A DNA stretch of 64,000 nt from Salisapilia sapeloensis CBS 127946 (taxonomy: Eukaryota > Protista > Oomycota), in the NCBI GenBank assembly GCA_023334545.1, contig JAADVB010000038.1, positions 1 to 64,000 of the forward strand. Direction: 5' to 3'. Shown one piece after another: positions 20,390-37,965 of the stretch. How positions within the stretch are numbered: position 1 is the stretch's first letter; each line of letters opens with the position of its first letter. The notes under the pieces were generated by a model. It ran no database searches and had not been told where the DNA came from. It worked only from the letters and a program-made list of their open reading frames with translations. The position numbers and the translations under genes are program-made.

Positions 20390-21899
20390 TGCACTCTTGG
20401 TTGATCTAGATGTTCTCTTTTATCTAATAATAGAGCTATCAACTGCACATCCAGACATGCCACAAAAAGATCTAAATATACGTGAAAGCCACATCTGATG
20501 CATCCTGCAGTGCGAAATCTTTCTACAAACAGGATGAAGCCAGTTGAAGTAGCGTATCTGGTGTCTGAAAGAAGGATTAACGATTTTTACCCGTCTAGAG
20601 TCACTAATCCGTACCAACTATTCGCGAATTTACCATGATATCCTCCAGCGCTTGACTCTTTACCAGCGAATTGAGTAGGGAGGAACAAAATGAAGCAAGA
20701 TGTGTTGAAATTGATCGAAGTTTGTCTGCCCTCAGCTCAAAAGGCGACGTACATACGGAAGCTAGATTACCCAAGCGAAGCGAATGCAAGCGAGTGGGCT
20801 GCACAGTATTATTTCGATCCAATCAATCTGTCGGCGACATGATTTTCATCACCTCGTACACAGTATACCTTTACCAGATTACCGACATTGCTTGTTTAAT
20901 CAACAACATGCACAAAATTCATCACCGTCGATACACCACAAACTCTTTCCCAGTAGCAAGATGCTATCTTTTGCGCTTGCAGACAGGTACTAGTCTTGAG
21001 GAAGCCAAGTTTGCGGAATGCTGCGTTACCTCTAGGCTCGAGAAAAGGTCGGTACTATCCATCATCTGAAAGCGGTACATGTGTAGATACGCCACTTTGG
21101 TAAAAGGCACAAGCAGCATCTTGAAGACAGCCGGTCCTTTCCAAAAACCGTCCAGTGTTCTAGGAGCAGAGCTGGAAAGTGAACGATACATGTGCGCGCG
21201 GGATGTGGGTTACCACTAACGCTGCTCCTGGTATCGTGCACATCGTCTGAGCATTGCTGCATGCGATAGCAGCCCTCCTCCTCCAGCTCGTAGGACCATC
21301 TAGCGCTCCACAGAACAGAACTTCATTCCTGAGGACCAAAGATCACAAATACTTCCGAAGCGACACTTGGGCTGCCGGCGCTTGACATGGAAAAAATCGC
21401 ACAGGACGGGTATAAGCATGCAGCTATTCCTGCTTGTTTAGAGAATCTATGGACCGCTCAGCCACGATAAGGTGTACATGCATGCTAGCTAGCTGTCCTG
21501 TATCGTGTGGTGAACGATGCTGCATTTGTACGCTTACAACAGGCTTCGAAACCAAGCTACAAGCTCTCGTGTGCTTGGAAGGTGCATGCAGACGGAATGA
21601 AGCGGAGACTATCACAGCTAAGCAGGTTCCTACTCGCATTAACAAGTGCCAACCTGCTCGTCCGAAACGCGAAGATTTCAACTAAATAACTGCCTTCGCT
21701 TCTCAAGGTTATCTTCGAGAACCAAAACACAATGCTTGCGTGATAATCGTTTTAATTGCTGCCTCTGCCCCATGCTTGCTGCAATATGACTTTCCTCCTC
21801 GTCCGTGTAGAACTCCGGGTGACAAGCATTCCCACGTGAATGTTAGCTTTAAGTCAAAACAGAGCTACAATAACACTGGCTGACTAGCTATTTCTTACA

Positions 21900-24800
21900 G
21901 TCGTTCCAGCTCACACTTGCTGCCGATGAACTAGCTTTTGCGACTGTAAGGAACGTCATGAGAAAAGCATCTCTAAATACAATGATGCTTTATTAAATAA
22001 GCTTTTCGTCTAAGAAGTTTCAATAATTTAATATTTTACTAATTTTAAGCCTATCAAAGCGTGTACGGCAATGAAGTTTTTGTTTGTGGCGCATTACACA
22101 AAAACTCTCAAAATTTTAACATTATGTGAAGGTTATAACTTTATAACATACTCAGGTCTAAATTAATAAAGAAATGGCAAATGCAAACACAACAACTGCG
22201 TGACATCGCAAAAGCTGAAAAATAGCAACTTCTATGCTATTTAGAAAACACTTTTATTTGTAAACAAATATTTGTCTGTTTATAACAGTAGAAAAAAAAT
22301 TTACGATATAACAAAAGGCTATAAACGTATAGCTGTAGTGAAGATCAAAAATTCCACAGGTATGGTTTCATAAAAACCACATGGAATGTTTCGTAACTAC
22401 CGTCGCAAACTGTTCTACCTTTTATATTTATTTCTCATGTACTATAAAATTATAAACTAGTCGTTTATCATTAAAAATTGCAGATAGTAAATTTAATTGC
22501 AACGCAAACCACAACCAAAAACTGTAAGCACTACCACATCAACTATAAAAAATTTAAACTTTAAAATATAATCCTATATATTAATACAACAAAAAGTTAG
22601 CACTGTAAACATTATAGATTCATATATGTTGAACAAGACACGATACGCCATATAATACTTTATCTAATTAAAAACAATGTGTGAAGTTAAAACAAAAACA
22701 GTATTTACAAACTCGGAGGTAACATTTTCAACATAGTTAAATGGTAGAGCTAAACATTCACAACATGACTGTTTAGAAAAATAACACTAGACGATAACAA
22801 GCAAATATTTTGTTTAAGCAAAAACAGCATACAAAAAGGCTTTATTAAAATAACAAGTAAAAAACAGAAAAATTGTATATGAAATTTTATTACAAAGATA
22901 AAAATGCTACTTTATATAGAAAAAGGCAACTCATGCAAAAATAAATGCTGCCAATGTTTGTTTATTAGTGCATGAATAACCAAACGATGAAACAATGCGA
23001 AAAAACAATATAACACGATACTACATGTATTAAGAACTGTATTATAAACATTATGCAAAGTTTTTACAAATAAAAAAATAAAAGTACACTTTAATTGCAA
23101 TACACATTATATGTAAAGTTTCTTTGTTTGTAAACATTTATAGCAGTTGCTCTATAAAAAATAACGAAATTGCGTATGCAAAACACAACAACAAATTTAC
23201 CAATATTGTCAAGTTTATTGACACAGCAAAATATTAATTAATTAATATTAACTTGTCGTATAATAATTTTGCGTGATATTTGAATTTAAAAAAAAATTTT
23301 TACTTGACAACTTCAAAAAATTGAATGCAGAATATTTACAATAATACAAAACAAAATAGTAGAGTATTTAGCTCAATTAATTTAAAATTCAGTTATTTAT
23401 TATATTTATTTTTTGTATGCTTATGTATGAAAAAGACTAAAAATTAATACAATAGTAAATATTTAAACGCCTATAAACTAACACTATTTAAAACATTTAA
23501 AAAAAAAATAATACTAAATTCAAAAGATTATGTTTTAAATAAATTTTTCTGCAGTAAATCTGTAAAACACAGTGTGTTTTATTGTGTCAAAATAGGTTAG
23601 ATTAAAAAAACATCAATTTTTTATATATAATATTGACACATTATTTGTGATCTGATAGATTTGCATCGAATGTGACAAACTACATTGTGTTTGTATGCTG
23701 TGTTTAAACTTTCTAAACATGACTTTATGTTTATGTTTTTAATCTAGCTTACGTAAATACTATATATATAAAAAAAATTTAACAACAAATTATATCTCTC
23801 AAAAAAATATTGTTTTAACGCTGACAATATAAAATTGATTAATGCGTTCGTTCTTCAGGTTTCTACTTGTGTATGAGACAAGCGATTTTTTTTGTTAAAT
23901 TTTGTTAAACCTATTAGTTTTTTACATAAATCTCTTTTTTAGACTATGTAATTGTTCTTTAAATGAGTTTTTTGTCAAGTATGTATGTATTTAGTTTTGT
24001 TTTGTTCGATGTGTCGCATTTTGCATATAATTTACTGTAAGTTCGTAAATGCTTATTGGTTTAAAGAAATACAAGGCGTACTTGTACTTTGTAATATTTA
24101 CAACTAAAAGATAAATACGCATGATTTTAAGGCTAAATATAGTGAAAAACCCTTCATTTATAAACTGTCTATTGACAATGTGTGTTAAACTCTTGTTATT
24201 CTTTTAGCTATCACATAAAGCGCAATGTTTTTCTTTTTTTTTACGTTCACATTTTATATAGAATTATTATAATAATATAAAGACGTCTGTAGACATTTAG
24301 CAGTTTAACATATTTCTTTTTGACAATTACATATAAGTTATATTGACAAATTTGTTACCTCTAAAATATTTGTGCGTAGCGGTGTTATCTTAAGAAGAAT
24401 ATATTTGTTTGTTTTTAAAGCAATACATTTAAATAGAATATGTTGATTCATTATTAGTTCTACATATTGAAACGGCTATATATGTTTAGCGTTGTAAAAT
24501 AAAGTTGTAAGCTTGTGCGAAATTTCAACACTAATTTTGCATCTACATATGGATTTTCGTTTTCATGTAACAGTAGAACATTGTAGAACCTACCTATATC
24601 TAAGCGTAAGTATAATTTATCTGTATGTACAGTTGCAGTTTATAATACATGCTTTTAGAAATGTGTACCTTCTTGTGATAGAGGTTTTCGTACATCTTGC
24701 CTTAACTTTGCCGCGATGTTATATACGACTAGCTTGGCATATATACCAACTAAAATTGATGTAGAAACTGCGCTAATGCTGTTTAGCACAAGTTTGATGT

Positions 24801-25500
24801 GGTAATTGTATCGTGTTGTTTTGTTAGATACTATTATGATTTGAGTCTTATAGAGGTTGTTTAAACGTGACGTTGCGCTCGTCTTATTAATCAAGGTTAT
24901 TTTGCTAATTTTCCTGATGTATTCTTGTGTACTATTCAAGCTTCTGCTAAACACTTTGTCGATCTGGCTCACGTATTTATTATATGTATCATGAAGAGCT
25001 TTAGATTAAAGAATGCATTTGTAAGGTATTTAGTTCGTTTACAGCCTTTTGGTATGCTCCGGTTACTAGGAGCGTTCAATTTGCTACTTCATTGAGTGAT
25101 CTTACATACCATACGTATTGGTGTATACCTGAGGACTTATGGTGATCAGCTAATGTAAACATATATAACTAAGCCACTTAAATGGTAACTCAAAGTCGTT
25201 GCTGTCGTTCTTGGCGTTATTAGCTTCGTTCCCGCGTCCTGGAATTTTCTAAGTATAATTTTCTTTGAATTTATAGATCGCCGTTCTCTTAAATTGAGTC
25301 TGGCACTACAAGCACATAAAATCGTTAAAAGTAATATGCCATTCATATATATACTCTAGTGCTTGTGTCGGTGCTGTTGGAACAATGTTATTTTATCTTA
25401 TATTTCGATGGCATATTTCAGGGATTTACTTTCAATGTTATGCTTGTTTGCAATTACACCTGTTCTATGAGATGGTTGCTTGGCTATCTATGCTGGGATG
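21900..25500. other. AT-rich, ORF-poor trough with a strand-skew inversion (candidate centromere/origin)
   Basis: Hand counts: line 23401 9/60 GC, 23461 9/60, 22861 10/60, 24241 13/60. No credible ORF. A- and C-rich top strand on the left, T- and G-rich on the right. The composition is certain; the function is inferred. Confidence 0.6.
23206..24349. repeat. Dispersed cluster of TTG(A/T)CAA and TTGACA motifs
   Basis: Full heptamer at 23206, 23304, 23972, 24172, 24320 and 24343. One-mismatch copies at 23218, 23584, 23633, 23672 and 23821. Confidence 0.7.
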
Positions 25501-27531
25501 TGATGCACATGTACTAGGCTCGACGAAGCTAGTAGCTACAGACGAACGATAGGCACACGTTGCTGTTTAAATTAGCTTACAAGCTTCACCTTTCTTATTT
25601 TGTCCGACACTGTTGCTCGACAAGCCTCCCATGCGATATGATCGCTTTTAGGTAGGCTGACTAGCGTGTGTTCGACTAATTGCCGACGACAAATGCTCTA
25701 GTAGAGTGCCGGTTTTGAACGTTGTAGTTGAACAAAATCAATAGGCATGTGAAAGGCGGTCTGAGCTGCCTGGATTGCTATTTTGTATATAGTATTTCAT
25801 TAGTTTGGAATCATGACTATTTTGTAGATCTTTCCGTCGGTGAATGTACTGGACACGGCACTGCCTACTGATTGCATGTAGTATATGTGCGCGAATTCTT
25901 CAGCTCGAATTTGCGGCAAGTCAACGCACAAGAGTGGAGCTATATGATGTTTGCATGGTTCACATCCAACACAGATATACTTCGAAGTCTGCTGCTTATG
26001 TACACTGACTGTACTGCGTTTCGCAATATAACAAAGAATGTCTTGTTCGGTGCTGTATAAGGCAAGTCGAAATACCAGTACCTGGATTATCTGCAACCAC
26101 TCGAGCTCTTTTGTTTACATCAGGAGCACAACGTTACCACAGTTGGGATGAAGCGTTCTCACAGGCTAGGCATAAAAATCTTTTTCGCGTGCAGCAATAT
26201 TACTCGTCTAGATTACTGCAGGACGTCGAAATCAGCTATTGAAGAAAGTAAAGTTTAAAATGTACAACTTCGTAGCGAAAAGTGGCAGCGCACAAGCTGC
26301 TGTCTGGAAATAGAGTACTGTACTCGGTTTTCTTCAACTCTTTTCCTATTGCTTCCTTTCTATACGCTTCGGATTGGTTAACGCACCGTGAGATGCTTCG
26401 CTTGGAGACTTTTGGTGTCATGTCATTTTCAATTCGTGGCTAGTTGTCGTGCGCGACCTCACATTGGATGCCAATACGACAGTCGTGTAGCAAATAGAAT
26501 TCACTAGGTCCTAGATGTACTGACCGCGTTAAGTAAAGCACACTGCTTCATCAATGCCGCAATTCGCTTGCTAGAAAAAGAAGCATGCGACTCTTGTCTC
26601 TCACTACTAAACTACGTTTTCACAAATCTTTATGCATGAGCAGGCAGTAGGATCAGAAGTGGGCCGAAGAGAAAGATCCACTGCTTTCCGTAGGTCCAAA
26701 TCTTGTGTCATAGTCTGTACCCTGAATAGGATTGTAGTATGAACAGTAGCTACGATTGATGTAATCAAAACGACAAGCTTCGTCGGTGAAACGTAATGCA
26801 GGTCAAGTTTGTAATCGCACTTTGACTACTTTAGTACTTCCCGAATACTTTTGATATGAATTGAGATTTCACGGACACTAGACACCGGATTCCATCGTTA
26901 AAGTAGAATGTGTAAATCTAGTGTCTATAGGTCAAGATCCTGGCCGAAGCGGTATTTGTTGTCGTACGAGTATGATGTACTTCAGCATTAATCTCTGTCC
27001 GTAAGCCATTCTTGATAAATAGCACATTCTCTACATGCAAGTCTTGCTACGACGTACCTTTTATCCTAAAATAGTAAATCGAAACGTGAAAGCAGTAGGA
27101 GCAAATCATACGCTTGTCTGTACACAAAGCTATTATGTACTTGGCAAATTTGCGACTTATGAGCGTAACTCCATGGCATGTTTCCGTCAACTTCAATAAA
27201 TGGGCAGCTCAAAGCATATCGGCCCGCCGTGGGCAGAGTAAATACTATAGAATTTCGATTTGATCACTATTGGACTCTACCATAATAGGTCCTGTAGATA
27301 TGTCTAGATCACGGTGTCCACTTCCAAGACCGATACCTGTGTTTCTGTGCCGATGGAGACTCTATTGCCTCTACTTTCAACATGGAAAACTACGTCTTCG
27401 TCTAAATCTCATATCATATTTCCTGCTCTGTCTAGGCCTCATCCGACCACCTTCGGCATGCAAGGGACATCGTCATGCAATATTCGAATAGAAAAGAAGG
27501 ACGGTTCGTGTTGGTAGTCGAAAGTCTATTT

Positions 27532-30500
27532 CTACCTACGTCGCTTGCTGAGACGCCATGCGTCCTGCGGATTGAAGCGGTCGTACAGCGGCTCGATCTT
27601 TTCATTCCGCTTGCGCTTGGACAGTTTCGACGGATCTCCTTTCTTAAAGAACGCAGGCGCGAGTTCCACGAGCCACTTGGGCTCAATCGTCATGATCTGG
27701 CGCATGTACTCTTTCGTCGTCAGCACGAGTTCATGGTAAAGCAGCCACTCTGGACTCTTGTTGAAGAGCGCAGAGGACGGGTGGATGTAGACTGGCTGTC
27801 CCTCGACCATGGTTCTGTAGCCTTCCTGCGGATCCTTCTTGGCCGTGTTGGCGAAGTAGCCCGACACGATGGCTTTCCGTACCTTGTCGTAGCTCTTTCC
27901 ACACGACACGACGTCCATCTTATATCGATCCAAAATCGCCAGCAGCTGCTTCCGGACGTCCTGCGCTCTCCGAATGGCTCTGGCCTGGATAAAGTTCTCG
28001 TAGCACCAGGGGTTGGAGAACTTGCTGTTCTTCCAGGCATCGTAGACCGCCAGGAGCGTCAGGTGGTCTCCCTCTGGCTGGTGGAACTTGGCTTTCTTCT
28101 GGTCCGCCTGCGCCTGCTTCTCCTTGGGCCGGAAAAAGATGTTTTCGACACTGAGCATAGCGACGATCGTGAGCACCTCCTCTGCGCACCCCAGCACGAC
28201 GCTCGTGAGCAGGACCTTGGCGTTCTTGGGCTCGACGGGAAACTCGGCCATTTTCCGGCCGAGTCTTGTGAGCAGCCCTTCGTCGTCCAGCGCACCGAGG
28301 GCAAAGAGGTTTTCGAGGGCGCTGACCATGGCTTGTTGGGGCGGAGGGTCCATGAAGTCAAAGGCCAGGAGGTCGTTGACGCCCATGGCTTTCAGCTGGA
28401 GGACGACGCTGCCGAGGTTGGCTCGCTGGATCTCGGGCACGGTCGTGGGAAGCATTTCGTTCTTATACGCGTTCTCGGTGTAGAGTCGGTAGCACTTGCC
28501 CGGCCCTGTCCGCCCAGCTCTCCCCGCGCGCTGCCTCGCCGACGCCTGGGAGCAAGGCACTACGACGAGCGAGTCCATGCCGATCTTGGCGTTGAAGGCG
28601 TTCTGCTTGCAGAAGCCAGGGTCGACGACGTAGTAGATGCCATCGATGGTGAGGGAGGCCTCTGCGATGTTGGTCGCCACGACGCACTTGCGAGAGCCCT
28701 TGGGCGCCGGCTCGAAGATTCGGGACTGCATCTCGGACGGGAGGGCTCCGTAGACGGGGAGGATGATGAGCTCTGGGGCGAGAGCTCTGTCTTGGAGAGA
28801 CTTGATGCGCTGGTACAAGACTTCGCAGGCCGTGTCGATCTCCTCTTGGCCAGTGAGGAAGAGCAGGATGTCTCCTTCCGGCTCCGACAGGTGGATCTGC
28901 ATGACACACAGGAGCGCTGCGTCCAGGTAGTCCGTCTCCGGTTCCTTGGTGTATAGAATCTCGACCGGGAACGTCCTGCCTGGGATGGTAAAGATCGGGC
29001 AGTCGAAAAAGTAGCGAGAGAACTTGTCTGCATCGAGCGTCGCAGAGGTGATGATGAGCTTGAGGTCCTTCCTCTTCCTCGCGAGGTCCTTGAGCAGACC
29101 GAAGAGGACGTCCGTGTTGATCGTCCGCTCGTGCGCTTCGTCCAGCATCAGAGCACTGTATTTCGAGAGCGTCGGGTCCGCCAAGTACTCTCGCAAGAGC
29201 ATACCTTCCGTCATGTACTTGATGATGGTCTCGGACGACGTGCAGTCCTCAAATCGCATGCTGTACCCCACCTCCTGTCCGAGCTCACACCCGAACTCCT
29301 CCGCGACACGCTTCGCGACAGAAGACGCGGCCACTCGTCTCGGCTGCGTGCACCCGATCAGCCCCTTGGACGTGAGGCCCATCTCGGCCATGTACTGCGT
29401 CATCTGCGTCGTCTTGCCGCTGCCAGTCTCGCCGATGACCACCAGCACCTGGTTGTCCGCAATGGCCTCCATCAGCTGCTTCTTGAGCGTGAACACCGGG
29501 AGCGACTGCCGCTGCTCCAACAGAGACTTGTTCGACACGATCCCGTACGACAGGTTCTTCCCCATGCTCTTTTGCTTCCACTCGGGCTGCTCCGACACGC
29601 CGCCCATGTTGATGCCACGAAGCTCCTGCGCAAAGTGTCTGTCCCCAGCGTCAGGCATCGGGTCTTCCCACGGACGATTCAGGTCCTTGGGAATAGACTC
29701 GATCAGCTCGTTCGCCTGCGCCTGCCGGAGCTCTCGACGCTCCTTGGCCAGACTCGACTGAGTCAGAGCAGCCCGCTGGAGCGTCCCGTCGGGGTTCTTG
29801 ACGATCTTGACGGGAGACAGGTCCTTGGTGGCAGCTGTCTGTCCTCGGAGGAAGACCGGCTCGTCCTCATTCAGCTCCACCTCGTAGTTCTCTTCCGTCT
29901 CCTGGGCGTTCAAGACGCCTTGGTCCTCGTCCAGCGTCGGGTAGTCCTCCATCGACAGGACGCCAGAGTTGATCAGCTGACGAGCCTCCCACCGTTCCGG
30001 AGACGACATGCGCTTCGACATGCGCTGGACCTTGCCATCGTCCTGCTGCGTCTGGTGGCTCATGCCAGGCGCAGACGGATTCACCCACGACCGGTCCGAC
30101 CTCGCAGCCTCTGCCTTGGCTTCCGACAGACCTTCCGACGACCGCATCGGCTTGAGGTCTTCGCCCGTCCGCTGGTCCACCTCCTTCATGGACATGCTGA
30201 GCTTCCGGCCGTTCTTGCTGATGACTTTGACTTTGACCCGGTCTCCTCTGCCTAGCACGTCCTTCGGATTCGACACGCGCTCCCGACGGATGTTGGAGAT
30301 GTGGACCAGACCTTCTCGGTGCTCTGCTTGGACGTCCTGGAGCTCCACGAACGCCCCAAAGTCCATCAATTTCACCACTTTGGCGTCGTAGATTCCGTAT
30401 AGCTCTAATGTCCGAGGGGGAGACCGGCCTCTGCGGCGCCGACCGAACTCGTCTCTATCATCCGACCGACGAGAGTCGTCTCGACCTCGACGCTCTTCCG

Positions 30501-30834
30501 TCGTGGCCATGTCGGACTCTTGGAGACCTGGAATGTCCGACACGGTTAAAGGACCTTCTGGCTTGGAAGAAGGCTTCTTCGCTTTTGCCTTGGCTGGGTT
30601 CTTCTTTGCCGGAGCAGCCGTCATGGTCTGTACGATCCGATGGAGGTTCTGGGCCAGAGCCGTCGGCAGCGGCAGGTCGTTGGCCTTGATGGCCTGGAGG
30701 AAGTCGTCTACAGACGGATTCTCACGGACCATGTCGATGACAAACTCCGCGACGGTCTTGTCACTCATGCCTAGATGTGTCTCGAGCTCCGTGCATACCT
30801 TGGAGACGAGCGATAGTTCCTGCAGCTTGTCCAT
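27532..30834 (-). CDS. PRP22: Pre-mRNA splicing DEAH-box helicase Prp22/DHX8
   Basis: S1 domain ('[13 protein letters not shown]'), '[12 protein letters not shown]', '[10 protein letters not shown]', 'DEAHER', 'SAT' and 'QRAGRAGR'. C-terminus 'KIEPLYDRF...AWRLSKRR'. Intronless. Confidence 0.97.
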
Positions 30835-31093
30835 CTCGCGCCGGCCGAGAGCTCGGTGTCTATTAAGTCTCCGGAGGAAGACGAAAGAGTTGTGGAGGTT
30901 CTTTCGTCTACCAATCACGACACCTGGACATGAGATATATCACCATGTGACCAATAGGACGGAGGAAGGACGCCGGAAAAACAGGCGGAAGGCTTGAACG
31001 GAAGACGGAGGAGGAAGCGAAGCGCAGAGGAGAGCTACTTGGCACAGACAAGTAGCGTTATTATATCCTAAGAGTAGTACACTTCAGAGGAGG

Positions 31094-32071
31094 ATGAGTC
31101 AAGGTGGACACTGGTCAGCGATGGGCGCCATGTCGTCGTCGCCGTCGCTGCCACACGGAGCTTCGTACCTGCCCAAGGCGCAGACGGACGACTTCGCGCC
31201 TATCATCAAGGCCATGAAGGTCGAGGAGAACGCTCAGAGGCGGCAGGGTCGGTATCCAAGTCAGAAGAGTGAGAACGAGGTGTCTGCTGGAGCAGCGTCA
31301 CCCACGACGTCGGTGGCGTCGTCGACGACCAGGGAGAGAGGGAAGAAGCGGTATCCGTGCGAAGAGCCCAACTGCGGCAAGTCGTTTGACTCTCGCTGGG
31401 CCTTGGTCCGGTACGTTTGTAGTAGTAGTAGAGAAAGGAAGGAGATGCTGAGACCTGGGCTAGACACATTCGAGTGCACACCGGCGAGAAGCCTTTTCCG
31501 TGCACGTACCCCAACTGCGGCAAGTCGTTTGCTGAAAAGTCCGCCATGACACGGTACGTCTTCTATAGGTAGACGATAGGCCTGTACTAAGTTGTGGGTG
31601 TATAGACACTTGCAGACGCACTCTCGCGTGAAGCCGTACAAGTGCACGTACGAAGGCTGCAGCAAGAGCTTCAAAGGGAAAGATTACCTCGGTACTCTCT
31701 AGTGTCTTCATCTCGTACCAAGCCACTAACTCTGGACAGAATTCCATCTGAAAATCCATGAAGAAGGGAATCCGTACGCGTGTGAGTTTCCCAACTGCTC
31801 CAAGACCTTTTGCAGTCCCAAAAGCCTCAAGAAACACATGCGGCAAGGCCACGGCCAAGACGTCGACGTCCTGCCGCCTACGCAAGACCCCAAGCCTCCT
31901 TCGGAAGCGCCTGAGAATACGTCCGTGGAGCAGTTCCTCCGCGACCGGATCATCCGGATGGCGACGAGAGACAAGGAGCGTTCGCAGCGGTATGAAGCGA
32001 CGATCCAGGAGCTCCGGGAGGAGAACGAGCGTCTCCAGAGACGTCTGCTGGAGCTCGAGCCTCCCCTCTAA
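31094..32071 (+). CDS. C2H2 zinc-finger transcription factor (four fingers) with a C-terminal coiled coil; three introns
   Basis: '[16 protein letters not shown]|[13 protein letters not shown]', '[13 protein letters not shown]' and '[19 protein letters not shown]', then '[19 protein letters not shown]'. Confidence 0.88.
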
Positions 32072-32147
32072 CGTCCTAGTATCAATGTATGTGGAAAAGC
32101 AACAAGATTCGTTTTTGTCAACTGTCTGTCTGTCGCTCGTGTTCAAG

Positions 32148-33785
32148 TTACATCCCGCGGGGCTTGGGGCCTCCTGCCGGCTTGCTCATGATGATCTGGT
32201 CCACGCGGAGGACGGTGATGGCGGCGTCGGCGCCTAGTCGGATGGCCGACTGCTTGGTCTGCAGGTGGTCCCAGATGCCCTTGGCGAGCGCGTCTTCCAC
32301 CACGTGCCTGTCGCTATAGTCGTCCACTTCGACGCCGGCGCTGCTCTTGCCTGCTGCGTGGAGAGAGTAGAGTGCCGAGAGCACTTCCGTGGCCTGCTTC
32401 CCAGAGTTCTCGGCCAAGATCCGCGGCACGACTTCAATCGCGTCGCCAAACTTCTTGATGGCGTACTGGTCGAGGCCTGGCGTGGACTCACCAAAGGCCT
32501 TGATCTGACGAGAGAGAGAGAGCTCGGTGGCGCCTGCACCTGCCACGAAGGCGCTCTGTTTGCACGTCGCCTTGAGGCAGTTGACGCCGTCGTCGATGGC
32601 GCGCTCCATGTCGTTCAGGACGTTGTCCGTGGACGCTCGGAGGACGATGGTGGAGATCTTGGCGTCGTCCGACTCCTGCGTGAAGAGCGTGACCTTGTTG
32701 CCGCCAATCTCCTTGACCTGGACCTTGTCGCAGAAGCCCATCTCGTCCGGCGTCGGCGCTCCGAGACGCACGAGCGCGTGGGCGTTGACTGCTCGGCAGA
32801 GGCGACGGAGCTCCCACTTGGACGTGATCTTGACGGCCATGAGCTTGTGCTTTTCTAAAAAGTGGAGCGCCATCTCGCTGATGCTGCCACCGGACACGAC
32901 GACCGAAGCGCCACTGTCTGCGATGGCTCGGATGGCCTCCTCCAAGTGCTGCTCCTCGCCCTTGTTGTAGTTCATGAGCTCGTCGGCGTCCTTGATGAGC
33001 ACCGTGCTCTTGGCTTCGGTCGAAGAGACCTCGAGGCCGCAGCCAAAGACAGCGACCTTGGCGCTCTCGGCCTTCTTGATGTTGCCCTCAGCGTTCCGCT
33101 GAACCGCCATGCCGCGCACGACCATCGAGTCGTGGACGTTCCCGCCGCGGAGCTTGCAGACGCGGATGTTGTCGACGTTGATGCTGGGCTTCTTGGGCTT
33201 GGCCGGCATCACGTTCAGACAGGCCTCTGCCACGAGGTTGGAGAGCAGATCTTCGTACCCGTACTGCTTGGATGCGAGAGACGTCTTGACGGCCTTCTGG
33301 AGCTCCGCAAGGTCTCGGACGTCGGATGGGCCGGTCGTCGGCGCCTGTTCCAGCAGCTCGACGCACTTGTCGTAGGCTTTCTGGTACCCCGTGACGATCT
33401 CGCTCGCGTGGAGACCCATGCGCAGGAGCGACGCTGCTTCCATGAGCAACTCGCCTGCGAGTGCGACCGTGAGGCACGTTCCGTCGCCATAGTCGTTCTC
33501 CTGCATCTTGGCGGCCATGACGACCATCTTGGCTGCTGGGTGCACGACCTCTAGCTCCTGGACGATAGCTGCCGTGTCGCTCGTGACAAAGATCTTTTCC
33601 AAGTGGTTGATCACGAGCTTGTTCATGCCGTTCGGTCCGAGCGAAGAGCGTGTGATGGCCGCGAGCTGTTTGACCGCGTCAATGTTCTTCGCGACGGCTT
33701 CGTCAACACCTTCAAAGTGCTTATGTCCTTCTTTGAGGAGGGAGGAGAGCCCTCCGGCGACATTGTAGCCCATGGATTTCGACAT
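32148..33785 (-). CDS. CCT8: T-complex protein 1 subunit theta
   Basis: 'SSLGPNGMNKLVINHLEKIFVTSDTAAIVQELEVVHPAAK', 'GDGT', 'IERAIDDGVN'-like motif and 'DQIIMSKPAGGPK'. Confidence 0.96.
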   Translation of the reverse strand: MSKSMGYNVAGGLSSLLKEGHKHFEGVDEAVAKNIDAVKQLAAITRSSLGPNGMNKLVINHLEKIFVTSDTAAIVQELEVVHPAAKMVVMAAKMQENDYGDGTCLTVALAGELLMEAASLLRMGLHASEIVTGYQKAYDKCVELLEQAPTTGPSDVRDLAELQKAVKTSLASKQYGYEDLLSNLVAEACLNVMPAKPKKPSINVDNIRVCKLRGGNVHDSMVVRGMAVQRNAEGNIKKAESAKVAVFGCGLEVSSTEAKSTVLIKDADELMNYNKGEEQHLEEAIRAIADSGASVVVSGGSISEMALHFLEKHKLMAVKITSKWELRRLCRAVNAHALVRLGAPTPDEMGFCDKVQVKEIGGNKVTLFTQESDDAKISTIVLRASTDNVLNDMERAIDDGVNCLKATCKQSAFVAGAGATELSLSRQIKAFGESTPGLDQYAIKKFGDAIEVVPRILAENSGKQATEVLSALYSLHAAGKSSAGVEVDDYSDRHVVEDALAKGIWDHLQTKQSAIRLGADAAITVLRVDQIIMSKPAGGPKPRGM

Positions 33786-33928
33786 GGTGGTAGATAGACG
33801 TACGAGGTGTCTGGTAGATCCTAAACGCCACTTTGATCTTTGGACACTGGCGGCTGCTTTCTTATTGGACAAAAACTAGATCCGACAGATGTAATTGGAC
33901 GAAAAGGAGCAAGACGGTGGAAAGGGAC

Positions 33929-35068
33929 TTAGGCTTGTTTGGGTTTCCGGCTGCGGCCATAGTAGACGACCGTGGTGTCCATGAAGACACCGTAGAGGAC
34001 TTGGAAGAGAACGAGGACGGGAGACAGCAGAGACTCCAAACACGTGTTGTCTCGACGCGTACCACCGTTGGCCAAGATGCGCAGGATGTAGCCTGCGGCA
34101 TCACTTGCAATCGAGTACTGACCATTCGCCATGCCTTGGATGAGCGACTCGGCCACCTTGTCAGGATGCTCTACGTCACTCGGACCCTCAATGACCATCG
34201 TCTCCTTGGGCTTGGTCTTGTTCTCCTCCGCGTACCCTGGCGAGTCGATGTTGCCAGGGATGAAGATGCGGACGTGGACGCCCTGAGGCTGCATCTCCTT
34301 GGACAGCGCCTCTGCGAAACCTCGGAGAGCGAACTTGGACATGCTGTACTGCTGGTAGCCGACGAACGAGATGATGCCAGCAGCAGAGCTGACCATGACG
34401 ACCTGTCCGCCGGCCTGGATGTGCGGCAAGGCGGCCTTGACCGTGTTGACGCAGCCGAGGTAGTTGATCTTGACGGTCGAGTGGTGGATGCTCACGTCCT
34501 GCTCTTCAAAGTACCCTGGTTTCGCCACGCCGGCGCAGCAGATCAAGTGGTCGATCGACTTTTCATGGAATCTTTGGGCGTTCTCCACGGCAGATTGGAC
34601 CGCCTCGAGGCTGCAGACGTCGCAGGACTGTGTGAAGATCGGAAGTCCGTTCGGACATGCTGACTCTAGCTCCGACTTGGCACTCTCGAGAACACTCTCC
34701 TTCCGAGAGACGATCGACACCTGATGCAGTCGTTAGATGTATCGGTAGGCTCTAGCTAGTTCGTAGGGAGAAGTACTTTGGCACCAGCGGAGAGGTATCG
34801 TTTGGCGACGGAGAGTCCAAGGCCTTGGGAGCCACCTGTAGTGTACTGGTTAGATGGTGGGTGGTGAAGGTAGAAGGGAAGGACGCACCGGTGATGAAGA
34901 CGTGCTTGTCCTGGACGTGCCATCCTGGTCGATTGCGCTTGGAGATGACGCTGGTCTATTCTCTACGGTCATATATGGATGGTGGAGTGGAAGGTGGGGA
35001 CGTACGACGACAGCTCCGACTGCTAGGACGGCGTAGAGACCCAGTGGGTAGTACCAGATCGACTCCAT
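33929..35068 (-). CDS. KDSR: 3-ketodihydrosphingosine reductase (KDSR/Tsc10), multi-exon
   Basis: N-terminal hydrophobic anchor, 'DKHVFITG', 'GGSQGLG', 'YQQYSMSKFALRG' (YxxxK), 'PGNIDSPGYAEENKTKP' and a C-terminal hydrophobic segment. Confidence 0.82.
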
Positions 35069-37965
35069 TGCTACTTGTCGCGAGGTAGGTCGGATTGTCA
35101 AGTCTGATCGTATCAATTGTTAGAGGGAACAAGTCTCCGGCACTGGAGGAGCTGTCCAGTCTACCAGCCTTTTGTTATGTACGCTAGCTTTATGGACACA
35201 GGGAATTTACTCATATGCACCACTTCTGGCTGTGGGTAAAAGTATGGTTGCCAGTTACCAAGTGCCAATAGTTAGGACAGTGCTATAAGGAATGTACTTG
35301 CCTGCACTGAGTTTGTAGACACACAGTGGCCTTGTTTGTACGAATTGTCTTTATAAAGGTTTTTGGTTCTATGAGTTTGGGCTGTTGCTTGATTGCAGCA
35401 CCATAGTGGCGCAAGTGGAGGGAATAATTTTTTGCCTCAGTCTGCTCTGGATAGGACACCATGCCCATCGATCTCGTTGTAGCACGATACAGAGATAATT
35501 GCGAGTTCATTGCAAAGTTACGCTCATCTAGATCATGCTGAGCTACCACAGAACAGTCTATCTCGATACTTATCGGAGGCTTTCTTGCATGCACATGGAA
35601 GGACGTCCTTTGGCTAATAATTGTACGAATGCCTACGCTGATATCTGTAGAGGATTCTATGTATTTACAATATCGAGAGCATATCTATCTTTCAGCAGTC
35701 GAAACCCAACTGGGATGCGGTCTTAATGGTAAAGAATCTGGCTACGCACTAGATGTCCGAAGGTCTCTTGTCATGCGAGTCATACCACTACGACAAAATG
35801 CTTGTATGTGATACCTTGCAGCGAAATGTGCTCATACGATACGATTGTACTAGAGAGACACGTTTGATTCAAATCGAATACACACGCTAACGAAACTTGG
35901 CACGAAGGATCGAGATGGCGGCACGAGTTACAGGCAGGATATGTAGACATGAGGCAACATCACACTTACTGGGACATGGTGTGCACGATAATCGAGATAG
36001 ACGATTAGACCACTTCGTGTTGCATCGATGCCAGTAACTCGAGTCGCTTTAACGTTTGCAGTAACACACGCCAAGTATCCGATCATACGGTCATCTACAC
36101 TGTTTCATCATGTTTAACATGCACACACTAGAGGTTCTTGTAAAGCAAGCACTATCGATATATAAGCTGCACCACTGGTCACGACGAGGTTTCCGATGTC
36201 GACACCCGTGAGCGCCGTTCGAATATCAATTGCATCTTCCAAACTAATCAAGCGATCGGTGCAGCTTGGAGGTAGTTCTGTCATCTTTGTTTATACGCTG
36301 GTAATATGCACAGTCATCTGAACACAGGCGAGTGCTATCCGCAGTGACGCTCCATCTAATCTTCAAGATACATCCTGGAGATGTTTCCTAATGAGTATAG
36401 ATAAAGATTCGAGCAAGACAGTCTAGACGAATGGCATACTGATGCAGTCTCCTGATCTGCAGTGTATTCTCTACGGCAGTGCATGGAAAGTGAAGGAGAG
36501 ATCTGGTAACTTGTGGCTGATCTGTTCGATAAGTGTTTATGCTACGGAACCTGATCTGTCTGTTTACTTTCTGGCTGATCCTCTCTTTCATGTGAACCGG
36601 CACACGAGCTTTTATCTGGTCAGATACATCCTGCAGAGCGAACACACGGATCCAGGTATAGGCAAGATGTGCATTACGTTCTAGCATGGAGGGTTGATGC
36701 TTGGAGAGAGCAGATTGCAGCATGCCATGCGGAATATGTATTAGAATCGGATCGGAAGCGTAAATAGACTAGTGTGACTTGCAGTGGCGTGCTGAACCTC
36801 AATACCACTCCGTTCAGAGCTGTACTAATTAGCCACGCTGTCGTAATCTCCACAAGAGTACTCGTCTATGGATGAAAGTGCGGACGTCAAGCAGGGCGTT
36901 CCAACCGCCTATACTCGTGTCCATTGTCTTTGCCTCAGTATCTTGTACCGTGTAGCCATGTAAGCAAGCTCCAATTGCGATTCCTACGATCGATGCTAGT
37001 CGTCCTATTTTCTTGCTTTTAACACGACCGAGCACGGAGCGAGATACGCTTCGACCCAGCAAGTAGCATTGCAAATGTAAAAACGTCGTACATTCCTTTT
37101 TCCCATGACGCACGTGACTACAAGATGGGCGTTTCATAGCAGACTAACTTTTGCGATGCTTTCGTGCTATCGGATTGAACTTTTCGCTGTCAATTCGTCT
37201 TGTTGTGGCGTCCGAGGCTGAAGGACCCGACGGAAAGAAGGGTAGATGGTATCGACTAGTTGGTCACGAAGCGAGTATTGGAGCACAGAAGGATAGAATG
37301 TGCCGTTAAGGTACCCCTCCTAGGTTACCATCCATATTCTTCCATACTTGTTCTAGTGAGACGCTCGTGGAGGCGTTTCCCTCCGAGCCTGTAGAGTAAA
37401 GGCACGACAGCAGAACAGGTCAAGGACGGAAGATTAGAACGAGGCAGCGGCCCCTCAGGATCGGACAATTCCACGACAGCGTGTCAATCTGGGACGTATC
37501 GGATGGCTCCATGATCTTTTTTTCTCTCTTTTCTTCTGCGTCCGCACCCAGGTGCCCCTTGCACGTCTACTAGATGTATCCTGTGTTGCCTATCTTCCCT
37601 ACTCTCGAGCGTATAAGCAGGATGATTCTGCTAGAGGACGAGCGAACAGGAGGCTGGTCGCTCGACGTATAGATCGTGGCCACAACGGGCGATGCGGCTG
37701 GGTTACCAACGGCTTGGCGCGTCATGTGCATTTCCAACCAAACGCAGTTCCTTTGGTCGCACTTGGGCTTTGTATCGGGGGAGGCCGTTGGATTGAAAAA
37801 AACGTCTCGCCTCGGTGATTTCCAACACGACGACGCGCACTGGCTCTCCATGTTGCTCACTACCACCTCCGACCTCATTTCCCCATCGCCATCTCTTGCT
37901 CCAAGTCTCTGTGCACACGCCGTGCCACGGATTCCATCGGAGTTTGAATCGATACAATAGAGACC

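What the first reader, a model, noticed from the sequence alone, without database searches (positions are those of the whole stretch)
23206..24349. Quasi-palindromic TTG(A/T)CAA motif clustered around the skew switch
Seen: nine TTGACA/TGTCAA hexamers in ~1.15 kb (23206, 23218, 23304, 23585, 23633, 23972, 24172, 24320, 24343), six of them full TTGWCAA, plus GTGACAA and CTGACAA. I saw none in 22.0-23.2 kb or 24.4-25.4 kb. A rough expectation at ~22% GC is under one copy. Two inverted pairs occur (23206/23218, and TGTGTCAA...TTGACACA at 23583-23640). Inference: GC-containing words that survive in an AT-eroded tract suggest selection for a protein-binding site, either a centromere DNA element or an origin factor site.
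Basis: partly seen in the sequence, partly recalled or inferred. Interest (0 to 1): 0.7.

Follow-up and report, generated by a model that had tools for sequence, protein, structure and literature searches.

The report
TTGACA word cluster in AT island
Nine copies of the short word TTGACA crowd into the 1.1-kb centre of a silent, gene-free, very AT-rich island in a compact oomycete genome; this is about ten times the expected number, but one island cannot show whether they are protein-binding sites or a lucky cluster.

Summary
All nine TTGACA/TGTCAA hexamers lie at the stated places. Six are TTGWCAA. There are none in the rest of the 3.6-kb island.

Expected number in the 1,144-bp core is 0.6-1.1 under backgrounds that do not include the motif itself. 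It is the most over-represented hexamer at the kilobase scale. Among 252 words of the same composition, the mean count is 0.67 and the next unrelated word has 4.

The signal fades with higher-order models fitted to the core, but that is overfitting. Honest multiple-testing correction leaves it borderline. Family-wise P is about 0.05 at the best scale and 0.2-0.3 over all scales and k=6-7.

The sites straddle the AT/GC skew switch (23.52-23.62 kb). They have no fixed spacing or orientation and are not parts of longer repeats. The word is not enriched elsewhere in the window.

The island is silent in RNA-like runs. It sits where a gene adjacency conserved in Pythium and Phytophthora is broken. 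The scan noted similar islands on other pieces of this genome, but none of those notes mentions this word.

My best reading, at about 40%, is a loose cluster of binding sites for a sequence-specific protein in the core of a centromere- or origin-like island. Chance is nearly as likely. The other islands could not be fetched, so the decisive replication test is undone.

The parts
21920..25460 (.). AT-rich island (GC below 0.33 in 200-bp windows; minimum 0.17 near 23230). It has no ORF of 70 aa or more before 24513, and no Pfam, Rfam or tRNA match. The only tandem repeats are five micro-arrays of 15-31 nt at the lowest score setting.
23206..24349 (.). Core holding all nine TTGACA/TGTCAA hexamers. 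The extended form is TTGACA followed by A or C in 9 of 9 copies.
23207..23223 (.). Palindromic pair TGTCAA-GTTTA-TTGACA
23583..23640 (.). Inverted 8-mers TGTGTCAA ... TTGACACA, 42 nt apart. The 8-mer occurs 3 times in the 64-kb window, all in the core.
23302..23310 (+). ACTTGACAA, one of three copies of this 9-mer in the core. The others are on the minus strand at 23206-23214 and 23972-23980.
23521..23616 (.). Switch point of the strand skews: cumulative G-C minimum at 23521 and cumulative A-T maximum at 23616. The plus strand is A- and C-rich to the left and T- and G-rich to the right.
25461..27531 (.). Right shoulder at intermediate GC (0.36-0.49). It holds only short ORFs without Pfam matches and no RNA-like contigs. 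It ends at the 3' end of the DHX8/PRP22 helicase gene (27532-30918, minus strand).
20645..21985 (.). Stretch covered by contigs of the RNA-like runs. These contigs stop at the left edge of the island. No Pfam-recognisable ORF.

Best explanation
The TTGACA(A/C) copies are a real over-representation. They are most likely a loose cluster of sites for a sequence-specific DNA-binding protein, kept in the most AT-rich 1.1 kb of a silent, unique island that itself behaves like a short regional centromere and/or fixed replication origin. What is shown: the word count, its confinement to the core, its position astride the skew switch, its absence from longer repeats, and the lack of enrichment elsewhere in the window. 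What is inferred: that the G- and C-bearing word persists against a local drift to A/T because sites are selected; that a protein reads them; and that the island is a centromere or origin. The only candidate reader with data is a TALE-type homeodomain protein. The protein-binding-microarray 8-mers of Phytophthora infestans PITG_05545 include CGTGTCAA, GTGTCAAC and ATGTGTCA, and these contain the same TGTCAA/TTGACA core. The irregular spacing and mixed orientation point to many weak sites that raise local occupancy, as proposed for the 12-bp motif of Malassezia centromere cores. They do not point to a point-centromere style ordered element.
For: Nine copies against 0.6-1.0 expected when the background (orders 0-3) comes from the outer island or from the core with the nine copies cut out. 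It is the top-ranked hexamer at W=1200 and W=2000. Among the 252 reverse-complement-collapsed hexamers with one G, one C and four A/T, the mean is 0.67 and the next unrelated word has 4, against 9 for TTGACA and 8 for the overlapping TGACAA. The intact word (9) outnumbers its eroded forms TTAACA (5), TTGATA (0) and TTAATA (4), although A/T is about 3.5 times commoner per position. The base after TTGACA is A or C in 9 of 9 copies, against 57% in the background. The longer forms ACTTGACAA (3 of the window's 5 copies), TATTGACA (4 of 4) and TTGACACA (3 of 3) are concentrated in the core. There is no enrichment outside the island: genic 0.86x, intergenic 0.92x. The flanks are not alike, so the copies are not recent duplicates. 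PITG_05545 8-mers. For the island context, no RNA-like contigs lie on 22000-26990, the skew switch is at 23521-23616, and the DHX8-KDSR adjacency conserved in relatives is broken exactly here.
Against: The window and the word were chosen after looking. With correction for all hexamers, positions and scales, family-wise P is 0.05 at best and 0.2-0.3 overall. There is only one island, so no replication. There is no conservation test, because relatives have no island at this locus and the only DNA run is probably the source of the assembly. There is no fixed spacing, orientation or extended consensus beyond about 7 nt. Diatom centromeres, as I recall, need no motif at all. Whether this organism has a PITG_05545 orthologue was not tested.
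Confidence: 0.4

Rival explanations
1. Chance. In any 3.6-kb AT-rich tract, some G/C-containing word will look clustered. A reader scanning by eye picks that word and draws the window tightly around it.
For: Family-wise P is 0.05 (W=1200), 0.29 (W=2000) and about 1 (W=600) with a local order-1 null. Over k=6,7 and four scales, 18% of simulated islands hold a word with a nominal P as small as the best word observed (ATATATA, 8.7e-07). TTGACA's own P (2.6e-06) is about three times weaker than that. Over the whole island the count is only 9 against 3.0, P 0.004 uncorrected. Other words (ACCTCTA x3, ATATATA) score as well at k=7. The window boundaries begin and end on hits.
Against: The simulated null is conservative, because it is trained on sequence that includes the nine copies. 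Leave-out backgrounds give 0.6-1.0 expected and P 1e-8 to 1e-6. Two partly independent regularities add to it: A or C after the word in 9 of 9 copies, and the recurrent 8-9-mers found almost only in the core.
Confidence: 0.35
2. Historical relic. The core descends from an old short repeat or inserted element that carried the word. The flanks decayed into featureless AT sequence and the copies are not selected.
For: There are sub-families of sites (ACTTGACAA x3, TATTGACA x4, TTGACACA x3). There are weak flank similarities, such as 23614-23642 against 24324-24352 at 76% and 23290-23310 against 23972-23992 at 76% complementary.
Against: Neutral decay toward A/T should destroy the G and C of the word at least as fast as the flanks, yet the intact word outnumbers TTGATA, TTAACA and TTAATA. 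There is no tandem array beyond five micro-arrays of 15-31 nt, and no direct repeat longer than 31 nt or inverted repeat longer than 38 nt, all at 76% or less at those lengths. Similarities of 76% over 20-30 nt are expected in 20% GC DNA.
Confidence: 0.15
3. Mutational context effect. The process that drove the island to A/T spares G and C in this particular neighbourhood, so the word accumulates without any protein reading it.
For: Earlier scan notes on other islands report context-dependent C depletion (C after a pyrimidine). These are leads only and were not tested here.
Against: Each copy contains one TC/GA step, which is the very context those notes call depleted. Dinucleotide- to tetranucleotide-aware backgrounds estimated without the motif still expect one copy or fewer. 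A sparing rule would also act in the outer 2.4 kb of the island, which holds no copy.
Confidence: 0.07

Closest known systems
12-bp AT-rich motif in the core of Malassezia short regional centromeres (Sankaranarayanan et al. 2020, PMC7025860)
   Same: Both genomes have high GC. Both have a 3-5 kb gene-free trough with an AT-rich core of about 1 kb or less. In both, a short word is enriched in the core, is not exclusive to it, shows no orientation bias, and has unknown function. Some of those centromeres also lie at synteny breakpoints.
   Different: The Malassezia motif was found in all centromeres of nine species, and the centromeres were mapped by kinetochore ChIP. Here one island was examined, with no chromatin data. 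The word here contains G and C, so it is not purely AT-rich, and it is shorter (6-7 nt).
Diatom (Phaeodactylum tricornutum) and Plasmodium short AT-rich centromeres
   Same: They are in the same supergroup, and diatoms are fellow stramenopiles. They are short, simple, non-repetitive, AT-rich regions (cited in PMC7082073).
   Different: By my recollection of Diner et al. 2017, low GC alone supports episome maintenance and no motif is needed. I could not read that paper here. A specific word would be a departure from that model.
Known oomycete centromeres (Phytophthora sojae, Globisporangium, Peronospora)
   Same: Same class of organisms.
   Different: Those are 211-356 kb (my recollection of Fang et al. 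2020, not retrieved in any call), rich in Copia-like transposons and heterochromatic (PMC7082073, PMC11139960). This island is 3.6 kb, unique and free of transposons.
TALE-class homeodomain binding site (TGACA core); P. infestans PITG_05545 microarray 8-mers
   Same: The 8-mers CGTGTCAA, GTGTCAAC, CCTGTCAA and ATGTGTCA contain TGTCAA, the reverse complement of TTGACA. Three island sites read TGTGTCAA.
   Different: Those sites were defined in vitro for a Phytophthora protein studied as a gene regulator. No orthologue was looked for in this organism. Six of the nine sites are TTGTCAA, which is not among the top 8-mers listed for that protein.
Budding-yeast point-centromere elements (CDEI/II/III), the CENP-B box, and the ARS consensus of yeast origins
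   Same: They embody the same idea: a short word read by a protein inside an AT-rich centromere or origin.
   Different: Those elements occur once or in a fixed order and spacing, and have no sequence likeness to TTGACA (my own knowledge). [quoted passage not shown]

Membership tests
Short regional AT-rich centromere (Malassezia / diatom / Candida lusitaniae type) | Occupancy by CENP-A or kinetochore proteins | not testable with these tools
   No ChIP data are reachable.
Short regional AT-rich centromere (Malassezia / diatom / Candida lusitaniae type) | Gene-free, unique, a few kb long, deep GC trough in a GC-rich genome | tested here: met
   GC is 0.17-0.33 over 21920-25460 against about 0.55 in the flanks. 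There are no Pfam, Rfam or tRNA hits, no direct repeat longer than 31 nt and no inverted repeat longer than 38 nt.
Short regional AT-rich centromere (Malassezia / diatom / Candida lusitaniae type) | Transcriptionally quiet | tested here: inconclusive
   Contigs of three runs guessed to be RNA stop at 21948-21985, and none lies on 22000-26990. These are contigs only, and 'RNA' is a guess by the tool.
Short regional AT-rich centromere (Malassezia / diatom / Candida lusitaniae type) | Exactly one such island per chromosome | not testable with these tools
   Only this window is readable. Earlier notes list similar islands on other pieces but give no counts per chromosome.
Centromere-core motif (Malassezia 12-bp type) | The same word enriched in the cores of all or most centromeres of the genome and of related species | not testable with these tools
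The genome is absent from the collections. Relatives lack an island at this locus.
Centromere-core motif (Malassezia 12-bp type) | Word enriched in the core relative to the rest of the chromosome, not exclusive, no orientation bias | tested here: met
   7.9 copies per kb in the core against 0.46 per kb in the rest of the window. After composition correction the ratios are 3.0x for the island and about 0.9x elsewhere. Orientations are mixed.
Genetically defined point centromere (CDE-like) | Ordered elements at fixed spacing within about 125-200 bp | tested here: not met
   The spacings are 11, 86, 281, 48, 340, 199, 148 and 23 bp, with mixed orientation over 1.14 kb.
TALE-homeodomain site cluster | TGACA core with flanks matching the measured specificity | tested here: inconclusive
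   The core is present in 9 of 9 sites. Three of nine match the TGTGTCAA-type 8-mers of PITG_05545, and six are TTGTCAA.
TALE-homeodomain site cluster | An orthologous protein is encoded and binds there | not tested
   The rest of the genome is not readable. No binding data exist.
Replication origin with a consensus element | Strand-skew inversion at the site | tested here: met
   Cumulative A-T maximum at 23616 and G-C minimum at 23521. Divergent transcription or other asymmetric processes could give the same picture.
Replication origin with a consensus element | ORC binding or initiation mapped to the site | not testable with these tools
   No replication data.

The most novel reading that the evidence does not exclude
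The compact oomycete marks the cores of its short AT-rich centromere-like islands with a specific G/C-containing word, TTGACA(A/C), read by a sequence-specific protein (a TALE-type homeodomain protein is the one candidate). Centromere or origin identity in this lineage would then be partly genetic. That contrasts with the motif-free AT-rich centromeres of diatoms and with the transposon-rich epigenetic centromeres of other oomycetes.
Probability: 0.15. Interest if true: 0.75.

Novelty: new variant of a known kind. Interest (0 to 1): 0.4.

Why it matters
If the word recurs in the other islands, it would be the first sequence element tied to a candidate oomycete centromere. It would give a direct handle for finding the binding protein by pull-down or DAP-seq. 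It could also guide the design of stable episomes for oomycetes, as was done for diatoms. It would show too that a short AT-rich centromere can carry a specific G/C-containing word, not just low GC. If the word does not recur, this is a chance cluster, and the island remains of interest only for its composition and skew, which other findings of the scan already cover.

Tried and rejected
- **Fetching the genome's other AT islands.** Exact-protein look-ups of 12 window proteins found nothing. The collections open to DNA scans hold no eukaryotic genomes. The findings index gave titles only, and no note mentions the word.
- **Orthologous island in relatives.** The DHX8 loci of Pythium oligandrum, Phytophthora ramorum and an unnamed Logan oomycete have normal GC (0.44 or more in every 500-bp bin) and no island. 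No footprinting was possible.
- **Conserved centromere position.** The DHX8 and Elp3 neighbourhoods in P. ramorum and Globisporangium splendens are ordinary gene-dense DNA, with Ty3 elements near Elp3 in G. splendens. They give no evidence for or against.
- **Mitochondrial insert or RNA gene.** There are no Rfam, tRNA or Pfam hits.
- **Longer repeat carrying the word.** None was found.
- **General promoter word.** It is not enriched in intergenic DNA of the window.
- **In-sample Markov orders 3-4.** These make the excess vanish. I rejected that test because a 1.1-kb training set containing the nine copies predicts them by construction.
- **First simulation script.** It timed out.
- **Diner et al. 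2017.** The paper is not held.

Full report
**Setting**

The window is nuclear DNA of a compact, intron-poor oomycete. Long ORFs encode DHX8/PRP22 helicase, TCP-1, Elp3, CTP synthase, Mpp10 and a FYVE-DnaJ-PX giant. The best matches of DHX8 and Elp3 are Phytophthora, Pythium and Globisporangium proteins at 73-87% identity, with no near-identical sequence on record. None of the twelve window proteins looked up by exact sequence is in the protein collection.

GC runs at 0.50-0.62 in the gene-dense parts. It falls to 0.17-0.33 between 21920 and 25460.

**Check of the observation**

- TGTCAA lies at 23207, 23585 and 23973.
- TTGACA lies at 23218, 23304, 23633, 24172, 24320 and 24343.
- Six copies are TTGWCAA. 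GTGACAA and CTGACAA are present.
- There is no further copy between 21382 and 23207, or between 24343 and 27000.
- Both inverted pairs exist.
- The cumulative A-T maximum is at 23616 and the G-C minimum at 23521. The cluster (median 23633) therefore straddles the skew switch.

**Statistics**

*In-sample models.* With models fitted to the 1,144-bp core itself, the expected count rises with order: 0.68 (order 0), 1.1 (order 1), 2.5 (order 2), 4.4 (order 3) and 8.2 (order 4). The excess therefore seems to vanish. This is overfitting, because nine copies in a 1.1-kb training set dominate the counts of their own tri- to pentanucleotides.

*Leave-out models.* When the nine hexamers are cut out of the training set, or when the outer island is used, orders 0-3 all expect 0.14-1.0 copies (P for nine or more is 1e-6 or less).

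*Multiple testing.* I simulated islands with a position-dependent order-1 model (plus or minus 300 bp, trained with the copies included, hence conservative). I then asked how often any of the 2,080 reverse-complement-collapsed hexamers in any window reaches the observed P.

| Scope of correction | Result |
|---|---|
| 1,200-bp windows | family-wise P 0.05 |
| 2,000-bp windows | family-wise P 0.29 |
| 600-bp windows | family-wise P about 1 |
| k=6 and 7, four window sizes together | best word of any kind reaches family-wise P 0.18; TTGACA is a little weaker |

*Descriptive support.*
- Among the 252 hexamers with exactly one G, one C and four A/T, the counts in the core are 146 zeros, 69 ones, 25 twos, 7 threes and 3 fours. 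TGACAA at 8 and TTGACA at 9 stand apart, and these two words overlap.
- The intact word outnumbers its A/T-eroded derivatives TTAACA (5), TTGATA (0) and TTAATA (4).
- The base after TTGACA is A or C in all nine copies, against 57% after ACA in the background.
- TATTGACA (4 copies) and TTGACACA (3 copies) occur nowhere else in the 64 kb. ACTTGACAA has 3 of its 5 window copies in the core.

My judgement is that the excess is probably not chance (about 60%), but a single island cannot settle it.

**What the copies are not**

- They are not parts of a longer repeat. The longest direct or inverted repeats in the island are 20-38 nt at 71-76%, which is ordinary for 20% GC DNA. The only tandem repeats are five micro-arrays of 15-31 nt at the lowest score threshold.
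- Flanks beyond about one base on each side are unrelated.
- Spacing is irregular (11 to 340 bp) and orientation is mixed on both sides of the skew switch.
- The word is not a general promoter word here. Outside the island the observed/expected ratio is 0.86 in genic and 0.92 in intergenic DNA.
- Another reader noted TGACA-N4-TGTCA in two promoter-like regions elsewhere in the genome. I did not test that. No such arrangement occurs in this window.

**The island**

It has no Rfam family, tRNA or Pfam domain. This speaks against a mitochondrial insert or a decayed gene.

Three runs of the same organism, guessed to be RNA, give contigs that cover about 20645-21985 and stop at the island's left edge. 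Nothing lies on 22000-26990. The DNA run, probably the assembly's source, covers everything without a difference.

In Pythium oligandrum, Phytophthora ramorum and an unnamed Logan oomycete the order is TCP1 - C2H2 - DHX8 - short-chain dehydrogenase (KDSR-like), with less than 250 bp after DHX8 and no GC trough. Here the island and its 2-kb shoulder follow DHX8 instead, and a KDSR-like gene lies on the far side of TCP1. The island therefore occupies a rearrangement breakpoint and is specific to this lineage at this position.

DHX8 and Elp3 are 105 kb apart on one contig in P. ramorum, and 10 kb apart here.

Earlier notes of the scan describe similar 2.5-3 kb islands with the same mirror-image skew on other pieces of this genome, read as small centromeres or origins. 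I used these as leads only.

**Mechanism**

The plus strand is A/C-rich left of about 23.55 kb and T/G-rich to the right. This is the polarity expected around a long-used bidirectional origin. It could also arise from divergent transcription, which the RNA-like runs do not show.

In several yeasts, centromeres coincide with early origins and skew jumps (my own knowledge).

For the word itself I commit to a loose array of about nine weak sites for a sequence-specific protein that raises its occupancy in the core. Confidence is 0.4. The only candidate with data is a TALE-type homeodomain protein. TGACA is the canonical TALE core (established knowledge). The top microarray 8-mers of P. infestans PITG_05545 include CGTGTCAA, GTGTCAAC, CCTGTCAA and ATGTGTCA, and three island sites read TGTGTCAA. 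[quoted passage not shown]

The rivals are chance (0.35), a relic of an old repeat (0.15) and a mutational sparing effect (0.07).

**Comparison with what is known**

The nearest analogue is the 12-bp motif enriched in the sub-kilobase AT-rich core of the 3-5 kb centromeres of Malassezia. It is not exclusive to centromeres, has no orientation bias and has no known function. The difference is that the Malassezia motif was seen at every centromere of nine species, with kinetochore ChIP.

Known oomycete centromeres are long and rich in Copia-like elements. I found no paper describing short AT-rich ones.

The site layout fails the defining test of point centromeres, which is ordered elements at fixed spacing.

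**Verdict**

The decisive test is the same pre-specified word in the genome's other islands, and the tools at hand could not run it. I score interest at 0.4. The island class is notable and already followed up elsewhere in the scan. The motif adds a testable lead, but one that is not yet replicated.

Noticed in passing
window 20645-21985: Contigs of three RNA-like runs cover this stretch and end at the island's left edge. It has only short ORFs (132 aa or less) without Pfam matches. It may be an unannotated or non-coding transcript abutting the island.
   Followed up: partly
window 27532-34720 and 35100-37900: The TCP1 - C2H2 - DHX8 block is conserved with Pythium and Phytophthora. The KDSR-like gene that follows DHX8 in relatives lies here beyond TCP1 (33932-34720, minus strand). 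The ORF-poor gap at 35.1-37.9 kb, at ordinary GC, may be the other breakpoint of the same rearrangement.
   Followed up: partly
window 25461-27531: The island has an asymmetric right shoulder: 2 kb at GC 0.36-0.49, with only short ORFs that have no Pfam match and no RNA-like contigs. The left edge is sharp by comparison.
   Followed up: no
window 24357, 24679, 24851: The 7-mer ACCTCTA/TAGAGGT occurs three times within 500 bp on the right half of the island (expected about 0.02-0.03). It was the top 7-mer at small window sizes, and eight copies occur in the whole window.
   Followed up: no
L006:12208-14532 (Globisporangium splendens): In G. splendens a Zwilch (kinetochore) gene lies between Elp3 and CTP synthase, and two Ty3-type retroelements lie within 10 kb of Elp3. 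In this window Elp3 and CTP synthase are direct neighbours.
   Followed up: no
window 22250-22289, 23119-23141: Forkhead-like words (TGTAAACA / TGTTTAC) recur in the left half of the island, including a near-palindrome at 22250-22289.
   Followed up: no
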